From the sequence record OV032902.1: a DNA stretch of 64,000 nucleotides, one strand, 5' to 3'. Both the position numbers and the translations under genes were made by a program. Below the pieces are notes generated by a model that searched no databases, had not been told where the DNA came from, and saw only the letters and a program-made list of their open reading frames with translations. Shown here one piece after another: positions 2,894 to 58,080 of the stretch. Every line of letters starts with the position of its first letter. The first letter of the stretch is position 1.

Positions 2894-4174
2894 TTATGGA
2901 CGTACGTAGTCTGCACGGATAAGCATCTTAAACAACATGCCGTCTACTGCCGTCTCCAAGAAGATCTTGTTGTTGATCATGTTCTCGGTTACGTTACCAG
3001 GCAGTACAGTTGCACCAGAGAAGTTCTCAGCTAAAGCCGCTAGAGTTTCAAGTGCCTGAATCGCAGTAATAGTAGTTGCAGAGATGTCGCCCGCTACAGG
3101 GTCATTGATATTAAACAATGCATAGTCAGGATACATTGTTGAGAATAGACGCTCTTCATTAGAGTTACCTAGACCAGCAATAGTCAGCATAGGTAGAGAC
3201 TTATAAAGAAGAACAACTAGTTCGCCTTGCTCTTCCCATTCTGTTTGAGAACGAGTAGAGAAGTTTTCATTACCGATGGCACCTGAGCTACCCAATGCAA
3301 TCATTGGACGGTAGTATGCATCTATAGAAGGACCTGCGCTTACTGCTACTTGGTCCCATAGAGGAATGAACGTAAAGTTGTCCTCTACTTGGATGTCCGG
3401 AAGATATGTCTTCCAGCTATCGATGCTGTTTCCCGAGTTAGTAATCAGGTATTGACGAATCGCTTCTAGGATCACGTCGGTACGCATGGACTCGATACCC
3501 CAACCTAGGACAACCCAGTTTGTGTTGATGGTATTATCGTCCGCATCTTTCCAGCGCAATGTGTAGATACGACGGTGAGACGAAGGAGTTCCATCTAACG
3601 CAGCTTCTTCCATTTGTGCTGTGTCTGCCGCAGATACAGTGTTAAGGATAGAAAGAACGTTATTGTATGAATCACGCAGTGCGGTAACTGGCATGATAGG
3701 TGGAACGATTTCGATTTCGTACTCGTCATAGTTGGCTTCAAAGTAAGCCGTTGCCATGTACAATTTAAGTAGGTAAGTAACACCACCGATTTCAAAGTTA
3801 CACTCAACCTTTTCGATTAGAGTTCTACCAGAAATAGGAACATCACTTTCTACAGTTACGCCAGTCAAATCAGGGAAAGTCGTTTCTAGGAAGTTACGAC
3901 CTGTTGATGAGCCACCGTAATTTTCTGAGATTTGGTGAGCAATGTTTAGAGCACGGTCAACACCAGCAACCGGAACGGCTACTTCTGCATTGTTCTGCTT
4001 ACAGCTGAAAACATTAATAGTTGTGCCAGGATACAGACCAGGGTCAGTATAGACACGAAGATCGCGAGTGTAAGCTTTAGCCCTTGGGGATAGCTCACCA
4101 GCCGGCGATACAGTTCGGCTATTGTTGCTGATCAAATCATTGATTTCAGCAAAAGCGTTGATGATATAAACCAC
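2894..4174 (-). CDS. Putative virion structural protein
   Basis: 426 aa ORF with GGAG RBS, in a structural-gene neighbourhood. Confidence 0.55.
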   Translation of the reverse strand: MVYIINAFAEINDLISNNSRTVSPAGELSPRAKAYTRDLRVYTDPGLYPGTTINVFSCKQNNAEVAVPVAGVDRALNIAHQISENYGGSSTGRNFLETTFPDLTGVTVESDVPISGRTLIEKVECNFEIGGVTYLLKLYMATAYFEANYDEYEIEIVPPIMPVTALRDSYNNVLSILNTVSAADTAQMEEAALDGTPSSHRRIYTLRWKDADDNTINTNWVVLGWGIESMRTDVILEAIRQYLITNSGNSIDSWKTYLPDIQVEDNFTFIPLWDQVAVSAGPSIDAYYRPMIALGSSGAIGNENFSTRSQTEWEEQGELVVLLYKSLPMLTIAGLGNSNEERLFSTMYPDYALFNINDPVAGDISATTITAIQALETLAALAENFSGATVLPGNVTENMINNKIFLETAVDGMLFKMLIRADYVRP

Positions 4175-46697: not shown

Positions 46698-46759
46698 GAT
46701 GTCTCCCTCGGTGGCTGTGTTTTTACTATACTATTTAACGATTGAATGATTCCCTATCT

Positions 46760-46768
46760 CTATATTAC
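46760..46768 (+). promoter_or_regulatory. Early promoter motif CTATATTAC
   Basis: See the copy at 11532. Confidence 0.7.
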
Positions 46769-46851
46769 CAATATGGATGTCCAGTGATAAACTCATATAT
46801 GCTTGCGAGTATATATCATGATTATCATTTTACTAAACTAAGGAAACTATC

Positions 46852-47559
46852 ATGAACTACGAACACTACGTGCATCAGCACATTATAGAAATGATTGAAA
46901 GCGGTAAAGCTAAAGGTCATACTCTAATTATTGACCCGGCACTTTATGGTGCTCTTAATCATACCATTCCAAACCACGACGGTGACATTATCTTTGTCGG
47001 CTTTGATAAGATATCACCACTAGAGATCATAGAACGCTCTGATACGCCCCTGAAGGTAACGGGAAGTATTTGGGCATATGAATGTGTGGTTGCAGAAATA
47101 CAAAACGATATGAGCTCTGTGGGCGGCTTAAGATTAATCCACTCGGACTTGATTCCTAAGTATCGTATGAACTACTTACCTTTTCCGATTTATATGGATG
47201 AGGAAAGCTTTGAGTTTTATCGTGATCAGCGTAAACGAGGAAACAAGAACTTTAACAACAATACAGTTATTCTACAAGACAATGAAAAAGTCTCAAAGGA
47301 ACTGGATGCGCTGTTAGAGCGTGCGTTAAAGATAGATGTTATCTCATACTTGATTTCAACGGAACCTACAATAACGTTAAAAGAAACAGAAGCGGGAATT
47401 CAGATAGAAGGAATTAACATTAATTTATCTGGTCCCCAAATCTATGACTTCACTGGCGTTTCAAATATTAAAGGTGACGTTGTCATGTATAACGATTTAG
47501 CACAAAAATTCGGCAACGTAAAAGTGGAGGGTCAGATAGCAGTCGTCAATAGGTATTAA
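46852..47559 (+). CDS. Hypothetical protein
   Basis: 235 aa with AAGGA RBS. Confidence 0.6.
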   Translation: MNYEHYVHQHIIEMIESGKAKGHTLIIDPALYGALNHTIPNHDGDIIFVGFDKISPLEIIERSDTPLKVTGSIWAYECVVAEIQNDMSSVGGLRLIHSDLIPKYRMNYLPFPIYMDEESFEFYRDQRKRGNKNFNNNTVILQDNEKVSKELDALLERALKIDVISYLISTEPTITLKETEAGIQIEGININLSGPQIYDFTGVSNIKGDVVMYNDLAQKFGNVKVEGQIAVVNRY

Positions 47560-47560
47560 G

Positions 47561-47878
47561 ATGATCTATACTGAGCTTAAAAAACACAAACTTGTAATAG
47601 TCGGTCAACACTTCTTTTGGAGAGGCGCTTTTCACCAACGCATAGGTGCGAACGTCTTCTCTAATGTTGATGAGATCGAAGCATTGTTTATCCAAAACGG
47701 ACAGATGCACGAAGATTACAATATTCTTCAAAACCACGAAGATCCAGTTGTGCGTAAGTTAGTAGCAATGAACTTGGAAAGCCTTCCTTATTTAGTTAAG
47801 GATTGTGATCCAGCTGTTGCTCTACTTGCGCGTGACTATCTTGCTTGCCGGCCTCGTGCTGGCGTTGTTGTACTCTAA
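47561..47878 (+). CDS. Hypothetical protein
   Basis: 105 aa, coupled. Confidence 0.55.
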   Translation: MIYTELKKHKLVIVGQHFFWRGAFHQRIGANVFSNVDEIEALFIQNGQMHEDYNILQNHEDPVVRKLVAMNLESLPYLVKDCDPAVALLARDYLACRPRAGVVVL

Positions 47879-48026
47879 CTTTTCTTTTTTGTTTGAAGGG
47901 AGGCTTCGGCCTTCCTTCTTATATTCTTTTCTTAAAGAACAAACGACAAATATTATGTGAGAAAAGCATTGAAGCGTATATGACACATCTGCGCTTTTTA
48001 AGATTACATCAAAAGGAGAACCCATT

Positions 48027-49061
48027 ATGTCTTGGGGAAATCAACGTCGTGGAGGCGGCGGTCGCCGTGGTGGTGGTAACTTTACACCTAAGCCTCGTCC
48101 ACAACTACCAAAAGAACACGAACTTCATCCACTAGCGGAAATCGCATGTAAGCACGAAAACAAAGCTCTGTTACGTGACTACGGTACACGCGGTGAAGAA
48201 GTATCTAAAGAAACTGTTATCTTGGATGGTGACTCTCAACGTCGTCCTATTCCTGTTCCAGTTGCTGCAATGTTCAACACAATGCAATTTGGCGTTCCAA
48301 TGAATCACCCTGAGTTTCCTTCTATCCAGAAGTTCAATACTCTAGGCGAATCAAACGCTTACTATGCTCGTTACCAATCTCCTATCATGTGGATTCATAA
48401 CGACGAAAACAATGACTTCCGTCATATCCCTGGTTTTACTCGTTACGTTGTCGATAAGCATCGTCGCATTCTAAATGCACACAACGGTATGAAAGTAGAG
48501 CCTATGTCTAAGTACATGATCGAACTTGTTCCAGATGGTCCGACTAACAAACTAGTTAAGACTTCTATTGATCAAGTAATGAACTTGGCATACACTGCAC
48601 TACCTGAAGACTTTATTGACTTCGGTTTCCGTACTTACTCACACGACTTCGGTTTGAATCTAGAAGGCGGTCAAGTAGGTTGGGTAGCTAAAGGTAAAGT
48701 AAAAGTTAAGAACAATGACGTTGGCATGGTTGCTGAATACAGTAACTTACCTATGTTCATGAAAACTTCTATTGCACCTAAGGACTTCCAAATCATGCAA
48801 GATATCAACCAACAAGCTTGGAAAGGCTTTAATGGTGGTGTTATCAATGCTGGTCCTTATTCTATCCGTGAATCACTTCCATTTGTTCAACCACCTGAGT
48901 TACCTCGCGTCGGCCAAACAGAAAGTGCACCACAACAAGATTCTTTTGATACAGCTCCACAAGAGCAACCTCAACAGCAATCACAACCACAGCAACAACA
49001 GCAGCAACAAGCGGCTCCTCAACAAACTGAAGACATTAGCTTCGACGATATTGAGTTTTAA
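48027..49061 (+). CDS. Putative nucleic-acid-binding protein: RG-rich N-terminus, NUMOD4-like segment, Q-rich linker, SSB-like acidic tail
   Basis: MSWGNQRRGGGGRRGGG; FRHIPGFTRYVVDKHRRI; QQQQQQQAAPQQTEDISFDDIEF. AAGGAG RBS. Confidence 0.6.
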   Translation: MSWGNQRRGGGGRRGGGNFTPKPRPQLPKEHELHPLAEIACKHENKALLRDYGTRGEEVSKETVILDGDSQRRPIPVPVAAMFNTMQFGVPMNHPEFPSIQKFNTLGESNAYYARYQSPIMWIHNDENNDFRHIPGFTRYVVDKHRRILNAHNGMKVEPMSKYMIELVPDGPTNKLVKTSIDQVMNLAYTALPEDFIDFGFRTYSHDFGLNLEGGQVGWVAKGKVKVKNNDVGMVAEYSNLPMFMKTSIAPKDFQIMQDINQQAWKGFNGGVINAGPYSIRESLPFVQPPELPRVGQTESAPQQDSFDTAPQEQPQQQSQPQQQQQQQAAPQQTEDISFDDIEF

Positions 49062-49225: not shown

Positions 49226-50776
49226 CTATTTGGTTGCAAGAAGGAAAGTTTCTATAGCGAACAGATCTTCTGGGTTTGCACCATAGACCGTCATAATGTT
49301 ACCGTGACGCGGTTCAGCTAATAGCGCACCCTTCTCTTCAAAGATATCGTTGTTTAGAACATGATGGATTATACGCACCTTAGGTGACTTACCAGTAACA
49401 TAAGCATCAAGTGCATTTAAGAATGCCTCATGTTGACGTACAGTAAAATCACGTTCCGCCACATATACTTTCTTGAATTGTACCTGAGATGCATTTAGAA
49501 TATGGAACATACCGGTACTCTGCATCAACTGCATACCTTTGGTGAAAGTAGGAAGATGATACAATAGATCATCAATGTGTACAGGTTTAACATCTAATGG
49601 GAAAAGACCTTCGCCACAGATTGCTAGATTCCCGCCTAAACGATATGCTTTGTCATAAGCATGGATGACAGGTATTTCGTTATCGCTTTCGTGTTTAAGG
49701 AAAACAAGAGATGCAGTATCTTCTTCTCTTTCAACTGGAAGAGAATAGTAAAGATTTGACATTTCATCAACGAGAGTATCGAACCCACCTTTCTTTCTAA
49801 GCATCTGACGAATAACCAGTAGATCGACCGGATGCATCTGTTGACGTTCAATCCAACCTTTCATCAAGAAAACAATTCGATCTGCATGTGCGTCTGACAA
49901 GAAGTCTGTTAGACCAACTTGAAAACGAACGCGCCATTCTTCATATGACATAGAGCCACTAAAGAACATGTGTTCCATGAACTTAGCATTTTGCTGTAGT
50001 TCTTTACAGTATACCTTAGAAGGGAATGTAACGCCTTTGGAGTAATTGATTGCTACATGGATACTACCTGCCGCATTCCAATCGAGCTGATTGATCTCGT
50101 TAAGTATACGGAACATCATTGGAACTTCATTAGGTTCACCACGGTAGCCTTTCACAATACGCAGACATGCGTCTTGTACATCATCACTGCCACGCAAATG
50201 CAAGCGACGTACAAGATTACGGTGGCTAAATGTAATGCTTTCTTTTTTAAGTGAATTTTCACGAAACGTCACCGTTACCTTTCTATTGATAAGAACATGC
50301 TCAACCATCTTACGAGGGTCCATCTGTAAATACCACTCACCAAGGATTCGTTTAACACTTCGTCCAAAGCCACGGTAGTACGAGATCAAAGCCGCAAAGG
50401 TTAAGATGTCTTTGCCGTTCATAGAGATAGCGACACCAGTATTCATTGCATAAGAGGTCAGCTTTTTATCTTCCGCTTTGGAAAGCTTAGCTAGTACATG
50501 CAGAGCATGATTAGTATATGCCCCTGCTTCAGAATAGATATGAGGGAGTTCGTTAATCATCTTGACGATATCCCAACCATCATTTTCTATTGCTTCATGA
50601 AAACCATTAAAGGCTCCATCATCGAAAACGCCATCCAGGTCAGCACGAAGAGGTAAGTTGCTGCCGGATACAATATAACGAAGGACGAGTTCTTTCGCGA
50701 TGATTCGATTTCTTTGCTCCAGCATTGACTTAAAAGTTGCCCAGCAAAAATCTTTTTGTTCTTTTGAAATTTCCAT
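49226..50776 (-). CDS. rsr: Divergent Ro60/Rsr (TROVE + vWA) RNA-binding protein
   Basis: 516 aa with colinear matches to recalled Ro60: LRYIVSGS, GFGRSVKRILGEWY, FSHRNLVRRLH, ALDAY..KVRII..LAEPRHGNIMTVYG. MIDAS DxSxS is not evident. Confidence 0.75.
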   Translation of the reverse strand: MEISKEQKDFCWATFKSMLEQRNRIIAKELVLRYIVSGSNLPLRADLDGVFDDGAFNGFHEAIENDGWDIVKMINELPHIYSEAGAYTNHALHVLAKLSKAEDKKLTSYAMNTGVAISMNGKDILTFAALISYYRGFGRSVKRILGEWYLQMDPRKMVEHVLINRKVTVTFRENSLKKESITFSHRNLVRRLHLRGSDDVQDACLRIVKGYRGEPNEVPMMFRILNEINQLDWNAAGSIHVAINYSKGVTFPSKVYCKELQQNAKFMEHMFFSGSMSYEEWRVRFQVGLTDFLSDAHADRIVFLMKGWIERQQMHPVDLLVIRQMLRKKGGFDTLVDEMSNLYYSLPVEREEDTASLVFLKHESDNEIPVIHAYDKAYRLGGNLAICGEGLFPLDVKPVHIDDLLYHLPTFTKGMQLMQSTGMFHILNASQVQFKKVYVAERDFTVRQHEAFLNALDAYVTGKSPKVRIIHHVLNNDIFEEKGALLAEPRHGNIMTVYGANPEDLFAIETFLLATK

Positions 50777-50806
50777 GGTTTGTCTCCTTAGGAAAAAATA
50801 ATAAGC

Positions 50807-50826
50807 AGGACGACCGAAGCCGTCCT
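50807..50826 (-). terminator. UUCG hairpin with U-rich tract just upstream of the Ro60 RBS
   Basis: Minus strand AGGACGGC-TTCG-GTCGTCCT, then GCTTATTATTTTTT. Confidence 0.6.
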
Positions 50827-50840
50827 ATCTTACTATCCCC

Positions 50841-50949
50841 TGAGCTAGTGCGCGGATAATACCTACGCAGTACCCCAGAGTAAACGAGCGAGGTTTGAGA
50901 ATGAGGCCAATTCGCCACGCCGGTATATGGCCACACTCTCTTCAGCTCA
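50841..50949 (-). ncRNA. Candidate Y RNA-like (tRNA-like) RNA upstream of Ro60
   Basis: 7 bp terminal stem UGAGCUG/UAGCUCA; internal stem GAGAGUG..GGCC/GGCC..CAUUCUC; 3' hairpin UGCGU-A-GG/CC-GCGCA. G-U pairs favour the minus strand. Confidence 0.5.
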
Positions 50950-51066
50950 ATTGTTCGGGTGTCTTAGTGGTTGTACATCCAGTAAGACTTGTACTTATGA
51001 AATTTTTAATTTAGAGGTCTATCTAAATAATTGGCCATGCACATTATTTTGAATGCAATTAGATTT

Positions 51067-51075
51067 CTATATTAC
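51067..51075 (+). promoter_or_regulatory. Early promoter motif CTATATTAC
   Basis: See the copy at 11532. Confidence 0.7.
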
Positions 51076-51111
51076 CATATTGCCTATTCACCTATAACAA
51101 AGGAGGTCGTC

Positions 51112-51732
51112 ATGAAAGTTCCATTTGAATTACCGTTCGCTTGCACAAAGGGTGCACATATTTCACCCAGTGGAACTATTCAATACTTCGAACCTTACCG
51201 GGCTATACAGTTGGCTTACATGATCTATCGTCATCTGGCCGAGAATGTCAATGAACCAGAAGTTTATATTACAACGGTTCTATGCAATATGACTCCTCGC
51301 TACATTGTGTCGATTTGTAAACCGTCAAACCTCGGTGACTATGATTGCTTTATCATGGAAAAGGTTAAGTTATCAGAAAAATCTAACAAGCTAACTCAGG
51401 TCGTCCTTTTATGGGAAGAATCAAAAGAAGCTTGTGAGATGCCAGCAATTGCAGATCGATATTTTATCGCGTCTGATATCACGCTAGCTAATCTGATAGA
51501 TACTGTACGTGAACCAGAGTCTAAGATTTATCCTTGGCTAGATAAACGCATGTCGATTATCTTTGCTGGCTACTCGCTAGAAAACGTTTCTGCGACCGGT
51601 TATGCATCCGTAGCTAAGCCGTTCTTCGAAGACAAAATGGTTGTGGCAGTACCACTGACGCATGATGCGTCTTACTTCAAACACAAATGGGAGATCAGCA
51701 ATGTTCGGAATGCCGACAGCGAAGATGTATAA
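51112..51732 (+). CDS. Hypothetical early protein
   Basis: AAGGAGG RBS before MKVPFEL. Confidence 0.6.
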   Translation: MKVPFELPFACTKGAHISPSGTIQYFEPYRAIQLAYMIYRHLAENVNEPEVYITTVLCNMTPRYIVSICKPSNLGDYDCFIMEKVKLSEKSNKLTQVVLLWEESKEACEMPAIADRYFIASDITLANLIDTVREPESKIYPWLDKRMSIIFAGYSLENVSATGYASVAKPFFEDKMVVAVPLTHDASYFKHKWEISNVRNADSEDV

Positions 51733-57940: not shown

Positions 57941-58040
57941 GACTCACTCCTTATTTTCTCGTCATTTTCAACGGCGAGCCCTTATTATATGTAGGCTCAC
58001 ACTATTTGCCGTAATGTTGCAAATCATCGTATTTTGATTT

Positions 58041-58049
58041 CTATATTAC
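58041..58049 (+). promoter_or_regulatory. Early promoter motif CTATATTAC
   Basis: See the copy at 11532. Confidence 0.7.
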
Positions 58050-58080
58050 CAACTCGGTTATACTTTATTGGAGATAAGAT

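What the first reader, a model, noticed from the sequence alone, without database searches (positions are those of the whole stretch)
50807..50995. tRNA-sized Y RNA-like element immediately upstream of the Ro60 gene
SEEN (minus strand, 50949 to 50841, 109 nt): a 7 bp acceptor-length terminal stem. It has an internal stem carrying GGCGAAUUG on its 3' side and a T-arm-positioned hairpin with GGUAUUAUCC. An extra hairpin (GTCTTA/TAAGAC) lies 5' and a UUCG terminator lies 3', just before the Ro60 RBS. KNOWN: bacterial Y RNAs (YrlA class) are encoded beside rsr, mimic tRNA and carry a GNCGAAN(0-1)G motif. Here the motif has one extra base and the canonical UUCGA T loop is absent. INFERENCE: the cognate, diverged Y RNA.
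Basis: partly seen in the sequence, partly recalled or inferred. Interest (0 to 1): 0.72.

Follow-up and report, generated by a model that had tools for sequence, protein, structure and literature searches.

The report
Diverged Y-like RNA beside phage Ro60

Summary
The window is Vibrio phage vB_VpaM_sm033. The 516-aa ORF 49226-50776(-) gets no Pfam hit. Its predicted structure and profile searches nevertheless show a Ro60 (TROVE ring plus vWA) protein.

The proposed 109-nt cloverleaf does not hold up:
- In context its 7-bp terminal stem has a pairing probability of about 0.04.
- It is not kept in four related sequences (40% of cells paired, the same as the slid controls).
- GGCGAAUUG is not conserved.
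- Rfam YrlA and ARAGORN find nothing.

Four lineages whose proteins are only 32-40% identical to sm033's share a different layout. It runs: a 5' hairpin, invariant GAGCUG, a variable hairpin, invariant CCUCGCUCRUU, a second hairpin, then a long intrinsic terminator just before the RBS. GAGC pairs with GCUC, leaving a bulged U and a CCUC internal loop. The two closest phages differ by three double compensatory changes and no disruptive change.

In the syntenic gap of phage BONAISHI, whose Ro60 is canonical, Rfam finds two tandem YrlA copies below the gathering score, plus a third stem-loop.

Best reading: a diverged Y-like partner RNA of about 200-230 nt that lacks the tRNA-like module. Expression and binding are untested. 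This is a new variant of a known kind.

The parts
49226..50776 (-). 516-aa diverged Ro60 (TROVE ring + vWA) protein gene
   Evidence: No Pfam or PHROG hit. AF2 model has pLDDT 86; the top 13 PDB matches are all Ro60/TROVE structures, E 2e-11 to 2e-7. A profile of the clade reaches proteins that scan as TROVE + vWA_Ro60. The RGFGR..WY and SHRxLVRRL motifs are kept; the MIDAS DxSxS motif is lost.
50784..50789 (-). Ribosome-binding site AAGGAG of the Ro60 gene
   Evidence: Read directly from the sequence; it lies 3 nt after the terminator U-run (50793).
50793..50839 (-). Extended intrinsic terminator: about 18-bp interrupted stem, UUCG loop, U-run
   Evidence: Terminator scan finds a core at 50827-50806 on the minus strand only. 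RNAalifold recovers a 24-pair helix, 9 pairs of which show compensatory change across 5 sequences.
50838..50880 (-).
   Evidence: Present in the MFE in context. Every lineage has a hairpin at this position with a different sequence. C-ZP2022 versus pir03 shows C-G to U-A.
50883..50893 (-). Motif M2, CCUCGCUCGUU: the CCUC internal loop plus the GCUC 3' strand of the conserved helix
   Evidence: Invariant CCUCGCUC.UU in all 5 sequences. Single copy in the window.
50897..50940 (-). Hairpin A: variable long hairpin between M1 and M2, the proposed effector or variable module
   Evidence: Predicted in all 5 sequences with unrelated sequences. C-ZP2022 versus pir03 shows C-G to G-C.
50908..50916 (-).
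   Evidence: Lies in the apical loop and 3' side of hairpin A. There is no CGAA at all in the SRR24799356 and L007 relatives, and it sits at a different place in C-ZP2022 and pir03. Judged to be a chance match.
50943..50949 (-). Motif M1, UGAGCUG: the 5' strand of the conserved helix, with a bulged U
   Evidence: GAGCUG is invariant in all 5 sequences. GAGC/GCUC pairs have probability 0.81-0.96 in 4 of 5 sequences, and in the fifth this fold lies within 0.2 kcal/mol of the MFE. RNAalifold recovers this helix.
50961..50988 (-).
   Evidence: The other four sequences carry AGUC in the corresponding upstream region and can be drawn as a hairpin there (by eye; their MFE folds differ). C-ZP2022 versus pir03 shows A-U to G-C.
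51019..51034 (-). Conserved AT-rich block 2 (consensus YAATAnTATG in relatives); candidate promoter or start region for the RNA
   Evidence: Conserved in all 8 related gaps, including BONAISHI. GC falls to 27% here and rises to 46-54% over the structured core. The transcription start is not determined.
51066..51077 (.). Conserved 12-mer TGGTAATATAGA, a promoter-like block that may serve the divergent plus-strand gene at 51112
   Evidence: Three exact copies in the window against 0.31 expected, each in a divergent gap. It sits 28-39 nt from the neighbouring gene's start in all related phages.

Best explanation
The minus strand between about 51020 and 50793 encodes a structured non-coding RNA of roughly 200-230 nt. 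It ends at a strong intrinsic terminator placed directly in front of the ribosome-binding site of a highly diverged phage Ro60 gene.

It is the positional counterpart of the tandem Y-type RNAs (two YrlA copies plus one stem-loop) upstream of the canonical Ro60 gene of the related jumbo phage BONAISHI. It has no tRNA-like module.

Its core is a short invariant helix, GAGC paired with GCUC, with a bulged U and a CCUC internal loop. This helix closes a variable hairpin. By inference, that invariant helix and loop is the site bound by the phage Ro60, and the variable hairpin plays the role of the second (effector or gate) module of Y RNAs.

Because no room for a promoter is left between the terminator and the RBS, Ro60 mRNA must arise by read-through of the terminator. 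The RNA and its protein would then be made from one transcription unit.

Shown: the protein fold, the conserved motifs, the conserved structure, the terminator and the synteny with YrlA. Inferred: transcription, the ends of the RNA, Ro60 binding and the read-through coupling.
For: Protein. Ro60 fold from AF2 (pLDDT 86) with Foldseek hits to 1yvp, 2i91, 2nvo, 9nen and 9l5y at E 2e-11 to 2e-7. The Atlas gives TM 0.64 to a TROVE/Ro60-vWA cluster. A clade profile hits proteins that scan as TROVE + vWA_Ro60.

Synteny. The same gene neighbourhood occurs in C-ZP2022, pir03, three metagenomic contigs and BONAISHI. The BONAISHI protein is a Pfam-positive Ro60. Its upstream gap gives two Rfam YrlA matches (59.3 bits, E 8e-13; 35.8 bits, E 5e-6). 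These are not tRNA genes.

Conservation. GAGCUG and CCUCGCUC.UU are invariant, in the same order and 49-63 nt apart, in 5 sequences of 4 lineages whose proteins are 32-40% identical to sm033's.

Structure. The shared architecture is the MFE, or within 0.2 kcal/mol of it, in all 5 sequences, with z from -3.2 to -5.8. RNAalifold recovers the M1/M2 helix and a 24-pair terminator with 9 compensatory pairs. On the alignment, 91% of cells pair, against at most 58% in slid controls. Between C-ZP2022 and pir03, 17 of 28 differences fall in unpaired columns; the 8 changed pairs all stay paired, and 3 are double compensatory changes, one each in hairpins 0, A and B.

Other points. No conserved small ORF is present. 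The terminator is on the minus strand only. The GC-rich core stands out from an AT-rich promoter zone.

Link to Y RNAs. The signature GAGCYG...CUYGYUC occurs twice in the BONAISHI gap. Both times it forms the helix that flanks the CGAA internal loop of a Y-type RNA. The background rate is 0.027 per gap.

Precedent. Thermus phage phiLo has two non-annotated Y-like RNAs upstream of its Ro60 gene, which bind the protein in EMSA (PMC12135203).
Against: There is no expression data: no sequencing run was listed, so the transcript, its ends and read-through are all inferred.

No known Y RNA model matches. The CGAA core of the known Ro60-binding motif is absent from the conserved helix.

The M1/M2 helix never varies, so covariation can neither support nor refute it. 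It is short (5-6 pairs) and internal, whereas characterised Y RNAs have a long stem formed by the two RNA ends (bioRxiv 10.1101/312249).

Ordinary local alignment between these gaps and the BONAISHI gap is at chance level. The shared signature was defined after looking at both sets.

Only 4 independent lineages exist. The two more distant relatives (L008, L009) lack the motifs.
Confidence: 0.55

Rival explanations
1. The element is a cis-acting leader of the Ro60 mRNA rather than a free partner RNA. It would be a structured 5' UTR whose terminator attenuates transcription, possibly with the Ro60 protein itself binding the invariant helix to set the level of read-through (autoregulation).
For: The terminator sits immediately before the RBS in all five sequences, so the gene can only be expressed by read-through. 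The invariant helix and loop looks like a protein-binding site. This reading can coexist with the partner-RNA reading.
Against: No alternative anti-terminator pairing involving the terminator's 5' strand is conserved. The only alternative pairings of M1 are lineage-specific and involve hairpin B. The syntenic position in BONAISHI holds bona fide Y-type RNA genes.
Confidence: 0.22
2. One reading: a 109-nt tRNA-like YrlA-class Y RNA (50949-50841) with a 7-bp acceptor-like stem, a GNCGAA-type motif and a T-arm-like hairpin.
For: The isolated 109 nt fold into that cloverleaf. UAGCUCAG followed by GG and UAG resembles the 5' half of a tRNA or YrlA D arm. One relative (SRR24799356) also has a long-range alternative pairing of M1.
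Against: Terminal-stem probability is about 0.04 in context. On the alignment 40% of cells pair, the same as the slid controls. There is no Rfam YrlA or tRNA hit at E <= 10, while the same model finds the BONAISHI copies. ARAGORN finds nothing. The motif has one base too many, sits in a loop and is not conserved. The arm order is not the T, acceptor-like stem, D order that defines YrlA (PMC4201824).
Confidence: 0.05
3. A conserved structured RNA unrelated to Ro60 function, for example an independent phage sRNA, an RNase-processing or stabilising element, or a target of another RNA-binding protein. It would merely share the gap with the Ro60 gene.
For: No direct link to the protein has been shown. 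The neighbouring conserved genes have no known function.
Against: Same-strand, immediately upstream placement is kept wherever the gene occurs. The canonical relative has Y RNAs at exactly this place. Protein and RNA lose their recognisable signatures together.
Confidence: 0.13
4. Nothing functional: chance hairpins in a promoter-and-terminator gap.
For: Short hairpins and CGAA tetramers are common; the isolated cloverleaf has z of only -2.5.
Against: Invariant 6-mer and 8-mer motifs in sequences whose proteins are only 32-40% identical to sm033's. Three double compensatory changes and no disruptive change between close relatives. Fold z-scores of about -5 in four of the five sequences and -3.2 in SRR24799356.
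Confidence: 0.03

Closest known systems
YrlA (Rfam RF02553; Chen et al. 2014, PMC4201824)
   Same: Encoded next to a Ro60 orthologue on the same strand, including in phages. Structured, with a conserved helix next to an asymmetric internal loop. The syntenic gap of the related phage BONAISHI carries two YrlA copies.
   Different: No T arm, no D arm and no permuted tRNA-like domain. No covariance-model match. No conserved GNCGAAN0-1G motif. The conserved helix is short and internal, not a long terminal stem.
Y RNAs without a tRNA-like domain: Salmonella YrlB, Thermus phage phiLo Yrl1/Yrl2 (PMC12135203), metazoan Y RNAs
   Same: Stem, internal loop, stem-loop layout. Located upstream of the phage Ro60 gene (phiLo). 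A conserved helix with a bulged pyrimidine on the 5' strand, as in the animal Ro60-binding helix.
   Different: Those RNAs carry CGAA (or GGUCCGA) at the binding site; here the conserved strand is YGAGCUG, with no CGAA. Binding was shown for phiLo by EMSA and has not been shown here.
BONAISHI upstream element 'Y0' (L011 about 3210-3290; seen here, not annotated)
   Same: A stem of 16 pairs ending in GAGC, an internal loop, a 9-bp stem and a loop. The 3' strand reads ACUU-GUUC, against CCUC-GCUC here. Same genomic position relative to Ro60.
   Different: Y0 has a perfect GCCGAAG motif and a long closing stem. Similarity to the sm033 element is limited to about 10 of 14 motif positions and was noticed post hoc.
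Terminator-containing 5' leaders (transcription attenuators)
   Same: An intrinsic terminator between a promoter and the RBS of the regulated gene, with structured upstream RNA.
   Different: No conserved terminator/anti-terminator alternative was found, and no match to any Rfam leader or riboswitch.

Membership tests
YrlA (RF02553) | Encoded within about 4 kb of a Ro60 orthologue, on the same strand | tested here: met
   The element ends 17 nt upstream of the ATG of the Ro60-fold gene, on the same strand.
YrlA (RF02553) | Match to the YrlA covariance model | tested here: not met
   No hit at the gathering score in the window, nor at E <= 10 in 50700-51150. The same library scores the BONAISHI gap at 59.3 and 35.8 bits, which serves as a positive control.
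YrlA (RF02553) | Nearly invariant T stem-loop (UUCGA-type loop) and D stem-loop, with an acceptor-like stem-loop between them (order T, AS, D) | tested here: not met
No T loop. Only a D-arm-like fragment, UAGCUCAG..GG..UAG, without a closing stem. ARAGORN finds nothing.
YrlA (RF02553) | GNCGAAN0-1G motif near the 5' end | tested here: not met
Y RNA (general) | Bound by Ro60 | not testable with these tools
   Needs EMSA or RIP. No public run was listed.
Y RNA (general) | Long stem formed by the 5' and 3' ends that carries the Ro60-binding site (conserved, bulged helix) | tested here: inconclusive
   A conserved bulged helix exists (GAGC[U]G / C-GCUC with a CCUC loop). It is 5-6 pairs, invariant and internal, and the RNA ends are unknown.
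Y RNA (general) | Second module of loops or stem-loops distal to the binding helix | tested here: met
   Hairpin A is enclosed by the conserved helix in all 5 sequences.
Ro60 / TROVE protein (the neighbouring gene) | HEAT-repeat ring plus C-terminal vWA fold | tested here: met
   AF2 pLDDT 86, pTM 0.85. Full-length Foldseek matches to Ro60 structures, probability 1.00.
Ro60 / TROVE protein (the neighbouring gene) | Pfam TROVE (PF05731) and vWA_Ro60 (PF25045) HMM match | tested here: not met
   No family even at E <= 10. It is linked only through a clade profile and by conserved RGFGR..WY and SHRxLVRRL motifs.
Ro60 / TROVE protein (the neighbouring gene) | MIDAS DxSxS motif in the vWA domain | tested here: not met
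   Replaced by LKHESD in sm033 and lost in all 7 diverged proteins; BONAISHI keeps DVSGSM.
Intrinsic terminator | GC-rich hairpin followed by a U-run, on the transcribed strand | tested here: met
   (minus strand only). The stem is conserved with compensatory changes.

The most novel reading that the evidence does not exclude
A subclade of jumbo vibriophage Ro60 proteins, which has lost both the Pfam-detectable TROVE signature and the MIDAS site, has co-evolved with a new class of partner RNA. The tRNA-mimic module has been discarded. Recognition has moved from the GNCGAA strand to an invariant GAGC[U]G / CCUC-GCUC helix and loop. The same RNA also acts as the terminating leader that sets Ro60 expression.
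Probability: 0.3. Interest if true: 0.6.

Novelty: new variant of a known kind. Interest (0 to 1): 0.45.

Why it matters

Here two related jumbo-phage lineages share the same locus. One keeps a canonical Ro60 with tandem YrlA RNAs. The other has a strongly diverged Ro60 with a non-tRNA-like RNA. That is a natural comparison for asking which RNA features are needed for binding and which belong to the effector function.

It also shows that model-based annotation (Pfam, Rfam) misses both partners in this clade. Phage Ro60/Y RNA systems are therefore probably undercounted.

Tried and rejected
- **Rfam, window:** the whole window at gathering score and the gap at E <= 10 gave nothing relevant.
- **Rfam, relatives:** five related loci at E <= 10 gave no YrlA or tRNA hit.
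- **ARAGORN:** nothing in the window or in 8 loci.
- **Protein families:** Pfam and PHROGs on the Ro60-like protein and three neighbours gave nothing. phmmer against PDB sequences gave only noise.
- **More relatives:** protein-pattern scans of viral, metagenome and genome contig collections with two alignments found none. A second word-indexed protein search added nothing.
- **DNA pattern scan:** GAGCTG..CCTCGCTCRTT in viral contigs returned 114 loci, all chance matches (no Ro60 relative and, apart from one isolated core match in L080, no promoter block).
- **Sequencing runs:** none was listed for two queries.
- **Homology to BONAISHI by alignment:** local alignment of the gaps against the BONAISHI gap was at chance level. 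Sequence homology of the RNA cores is therefore not claimed.
- **Covariance model:** a model of the M1 to M2 core found only its own five training sequences, with no copy in L008, L009, BONAISHI or elsewhere in the window.
- **Small protein:** no conserved ORF in the gap.
- **M2 as an anti-Shine-Dalgarno element:** rejected by eye, because CCUC is not complementary to the GGAG-type RBS of three lineages.
- **Derivation from tRNA T-loop or D-arm:** similarity of M1, M2 and hairpin B to these elements is ambiguous and inconsistent between lineages, so it is left as a note only.
- **Neighbouring genes:** Atlas look-ups of the 344-aa and 206-aa proteins were uninformative.
- **Reviews and structure paper:** three look-ups by PMC id were not held in the library.

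Full report
**Identity of the window and of the gene**

The region is 100% identical to Vibrio phage vB_VpaM_sm033 (OV032902.1; window position = record position minus 124000). In that record the gene is 'hypothetical protein' and the gap carries no feature.

The ORF 49226-50776(-) encodes 516 aa. It gets no Pfam or PHROG family even at E <= 10, and no sequence match to a solved structure. It is nevertheless a Ro60, on four lines of evidence:
- The ESM Atlas model aligns to a TROVE/Ro60-vWA cluster at TM 0.64.
- An AlphaFold2 model from a 62-sequence alignment has pLDDT 86 and pTM 0.85. Its 13 best PDB matches are all Ro60/TROVE structures: Xenopus 1yvp and 2i91, Deinococcus 2nvo, human 9nen and related complexes, and Thermus phage phiLo 9l5y and 9kop. 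E-values run from 2e-11 to 2e-7 over the full length.
- A profile of the four closest homologues finds 176 proteins in 1.84 billion representatives. Below the six clade members, all seven hits that were scanned (P0008-P0014) carry TROVE + vWA_Ro60.
- The TROVE signatures RG(F/W)GR..WY and SHRxL(V/L)RRL are kept. The vWA MIDAS motif DxSxS is lost in the whole diverged clade.

The pir03 paper had already called its orthologue Ro60-related by HHpred. It did not identify an RNA (PMC7765460).

**The observation**

The isolated 109 nt fold into the drawn cloverleaf (-40.4 kcal/mol, z = -2.5).

With natural flanks the fold changes. UGAGCUG no longer pairs with UAGCUCA. Instead its GAGC pairs with the GCUC of CCUCGCUCGUU, and UAGCUCA becomes the 3' strand of a long hairpin B (z = -5.1).
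- The four GAGC/GCUC pairs have probability 0.93-0.95 (0.43 for the G-C pair beyond the bulged U).
- Forcing the cloverleaf costs 2.8 kcal/mol.

**Relatives**

Homologues of the protein are rare:
- C-ZP2022 and pir03 (36-37% identity to sm033);
- SRR24799356 contig (40%);
- L007 (32%);
- two distant ones, L008 and L009 (18-20%).

All sit in the same gene neighbourhood. A tblastn search also found Vibrio phage BONAISHI. The pir03 paper names it as pir03's closest relative, with collinear genomes. Its syntenic gene is a Pfam-positive Ro60.

**What is conserved upstream**

The gaps (293-359 nt in the five closer sequences) cannot be aligned over most of their length, but they share the following elements in order:
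1. TGGTAATATAGA.
2. A second AT-rich block.
3. A hairpin-prone region carrying AGUC (hairpin 0).
4. Invariant GAGCUG (M1).
5. A long hairpin of unrelated sequence (hairpin A).
6. Invariant CCUCGCUC.UU (M2), 49-63 nt after M1.
7. A second hairpin of unrelated sequence (hairpin B).
8. A long terminator hairpin with a U-run.
9. The RBS.

In every sequence the fold 'GAGC, bulged U, one or two more pairs, hairpin A, unpaired CCUC, GCUC' is the MFE or within 0.2 kcal/mol of it. Fold z-scores are -3.2 to -5.8.

RNAalifold on the MAFFT alignment recovers exactly the M1/M2 helix and a 24-pair terminator, 9 pairs of which carry compensatory change. Counted on the alignment:
- M1/M2 plus the terminator core pairs in 91% of cells, against at most 58% when slid.

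M1/M2 itself never varies. That says nothing about pairing, but it argues for base-specific recognition.

The best structural evidence comes from the two close relatives C-ZP2022 and pir03, which show 28 differences in 255 columns:
- 17 differences fall in unpaired columns.
- 8 pairs are changed and all stay paired.
- 3 of those are double compensatory changes, one each in hairpins 0, A and B.
- None is disruptive.

The caveat is that the consensus fold was derived from these same two sequences.

No small ORF is conserved. The terminator exists on the minus strand only. The structured core is GC-rich (46-54%) next to a 27% GC promoter zone.

GGCGAAUUG is in the loop of hairpin A. C-ZP2022 and pir03 have AUCGAAUC at a different place, and SRR24799356 and L007 have no CGAA at all. 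With roughly 60 nt per hairpin, a CGAA is expected by chance in about one sequence in five. I treat it as a chance match.

**Link to Y RNAs**

Rfam finds no YrlA in the window or in any diverged-clade locus. In the 764-nt BONAISHI gap the same library gives two full-length YrlA matches with canonical T and D arms:
- 59.3 bits, E 8e-13;
- 35.8 bits, E 5e-6.

The gathering score is 69 bits. ARAGORN finds no tRNA there, so these are not tRNA dimers. This is both a positive control and evidence that the ancestral locus carried Y RNAs upstream of Ro60.

Folding the BONAISHI gap shows a third element, Y0. It has a 16-pair stem ending in GAGC, an internal loop of CGAA opposite ACAACUU, a 9-bp stem and a loop. 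YrlA-2 has the same junction (AAGAGC|CGAA ... ACUU|GUUCUU).

The sm033-clade junction reads YGAGC|U|G ... CCUC|GCUC. A joint signature, GAGCYG...CUYGYUC, occurs twice in the BONAISHI gap and once in each clade gap. The background is 0.027 per 764 nt in 2.2 Mb.

This suggests that M1/M2 descends from, or at least mimics, the Ro60-binding junction with the CGAA loop collapsed to a single U. I hold this loosely, for three reasons:
- The signature was defined after seeing both sets.
- Plain local alignment of the gaps is at chance level.
- A covariance model of the M1 to M2 core finds nothing in BONAISHI, L008 or L009.

**Mechanism proposed**

By analogy with characterised systems, Y RNAs are modular: a Ro60-binding stem plus an effector or gate module (bioRxiv 10.1101/312249). 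YrlA and YrlB of M. smegmatis lie upstream of rsr and come from one precursor (PMC4201824). PhiLo Yrl1 and Yrl2 lie upstream of the phage Ro60 gene and bind it (PMC12135203).

On that basis I propose the following. Transcription starts in the AT-rich zone near 51020. Most transcripts stop at the terminator near 50793, giving a stable RNA of about 200-230 nt. The RNA binds the phage Ro60 through the invariant junction, and hairpin A serves as the variable second module. Read-through provides the Ro60 mRNA. Only the sequence and structure features are shown; every functional step is inferred.

The main rival is a purely cis-acting attenuator, possibly autoregulated by Ro60. It is compatible with most of the data and may be true at the same time.

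**Verdict**

The finding is real as a conserved structured RNA next to a genuine but cryptic Ro60. It is not a member of YrlA, and the drawn tRNA-like structure is not supported. It is best filed as a new variant of the known 'phage Ro60 plus upstream Y-like RNA' arrangement. Interest is moderate.

Noticed in passing
L011 (Vibrio phage BONAISHI MH595538.1) 2982-3745, especially 3323-3442, 3525-3636 and about 3210-3290: The 764-nt gap upstream of the BONAISHI Ro60 gene holds two tandem YrlA-type RNAs with canonical T and D arms (Rfam 35.8 and 59.3 bits, both below the gathering score of 69). It also holds a third stem / internal-loop / stem RNA with a perfect GCCGAAG motif. None is annotated in the record, and no paper found in the library describes them.
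   Followed up: partly
window 46759-46770, 51066-51077, 58040-58051 (all minus strand): The exact 12-mer TGGTAATATAGA occurs three times (0.31 expected), each time in a gap between divergently transcribed genes. The same or a near-identical block sits 28-39 nt from the neighbouring gene's start in all related phages. It is probably a phage promoter element, but its direction is unresolved.
   Followed up: partly
window 51019-51034 and the equivalent place in L001, L002, L004, L007, L008, L009, L011: A second conserved AT-rich block (AAAAATAA ... YAATAnTATG; TTTAGA in sm033 and L007) follows the 12-mer by 23-36 nt. It may be the promoter or start site of the RNA and Ro60 transcript.
   Followed up: no
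window 49226-50776 (protein residues about 355-366): All seven proteins of the diverged Ro60 clade have lost the vWA MIDAS motif DxSxS (sm033 has LKHESD), while the TROVE motifs RGFGR..WY and SHRxLVRRL are kept. BONAISHI keeps DVSGSM.
   Followed up: partly
L002 (pir03 MT811961.1) 3631-3940: Three tiny CDS (31-36 aa; QNI21010-QNI21012) are annotated on top of the structured RNA region of pir03. They are not conserved in C-ZP2022 or the other relatives and are probably spurious.
   Followed up: partly
L004 4826-4960 (SRR24799356 contig) and window 50841-50949: In two lineages with a long hairpin B, M1 can alternatively pair with a downstream segment (9 pairs with one mismatch in SRR24799356, 7 pairs in sm033), giving a four-way junction close in energy to the conserved fold. 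It is not conserved elsewhere, and it is unclear whether this is an alternative conformer or chance.
   Followed up: partly
L008 3337-4000: The distant relative L008 has a 664-nt gap. It holds the promoter blocks, an internal terminator-like hairpin with a UUCG loop and a U-run about 210-250 nt in, and a second terminator before the RBS. This may mean two successive small RNAs of a different sequence family.
   Followed up: no
window 46852-49061 and 51112-51732: The genes flanking Ro60 (235, 105 and 344 aa on one side, 206 aa on the other) stay in the same order in all related phages, including BONAISHI. They have no Pfam, PHROG or Atlas assignment.
   Followed up: partly
L005 (ERR12141278 contig): A 2.8-kb contig 99.9% identical to the window splits the Ro60 gene into 165-aa and 344-aa pieces because of two single gaps. 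This is most likely assembly error in the same phage.
   Followed up: yes
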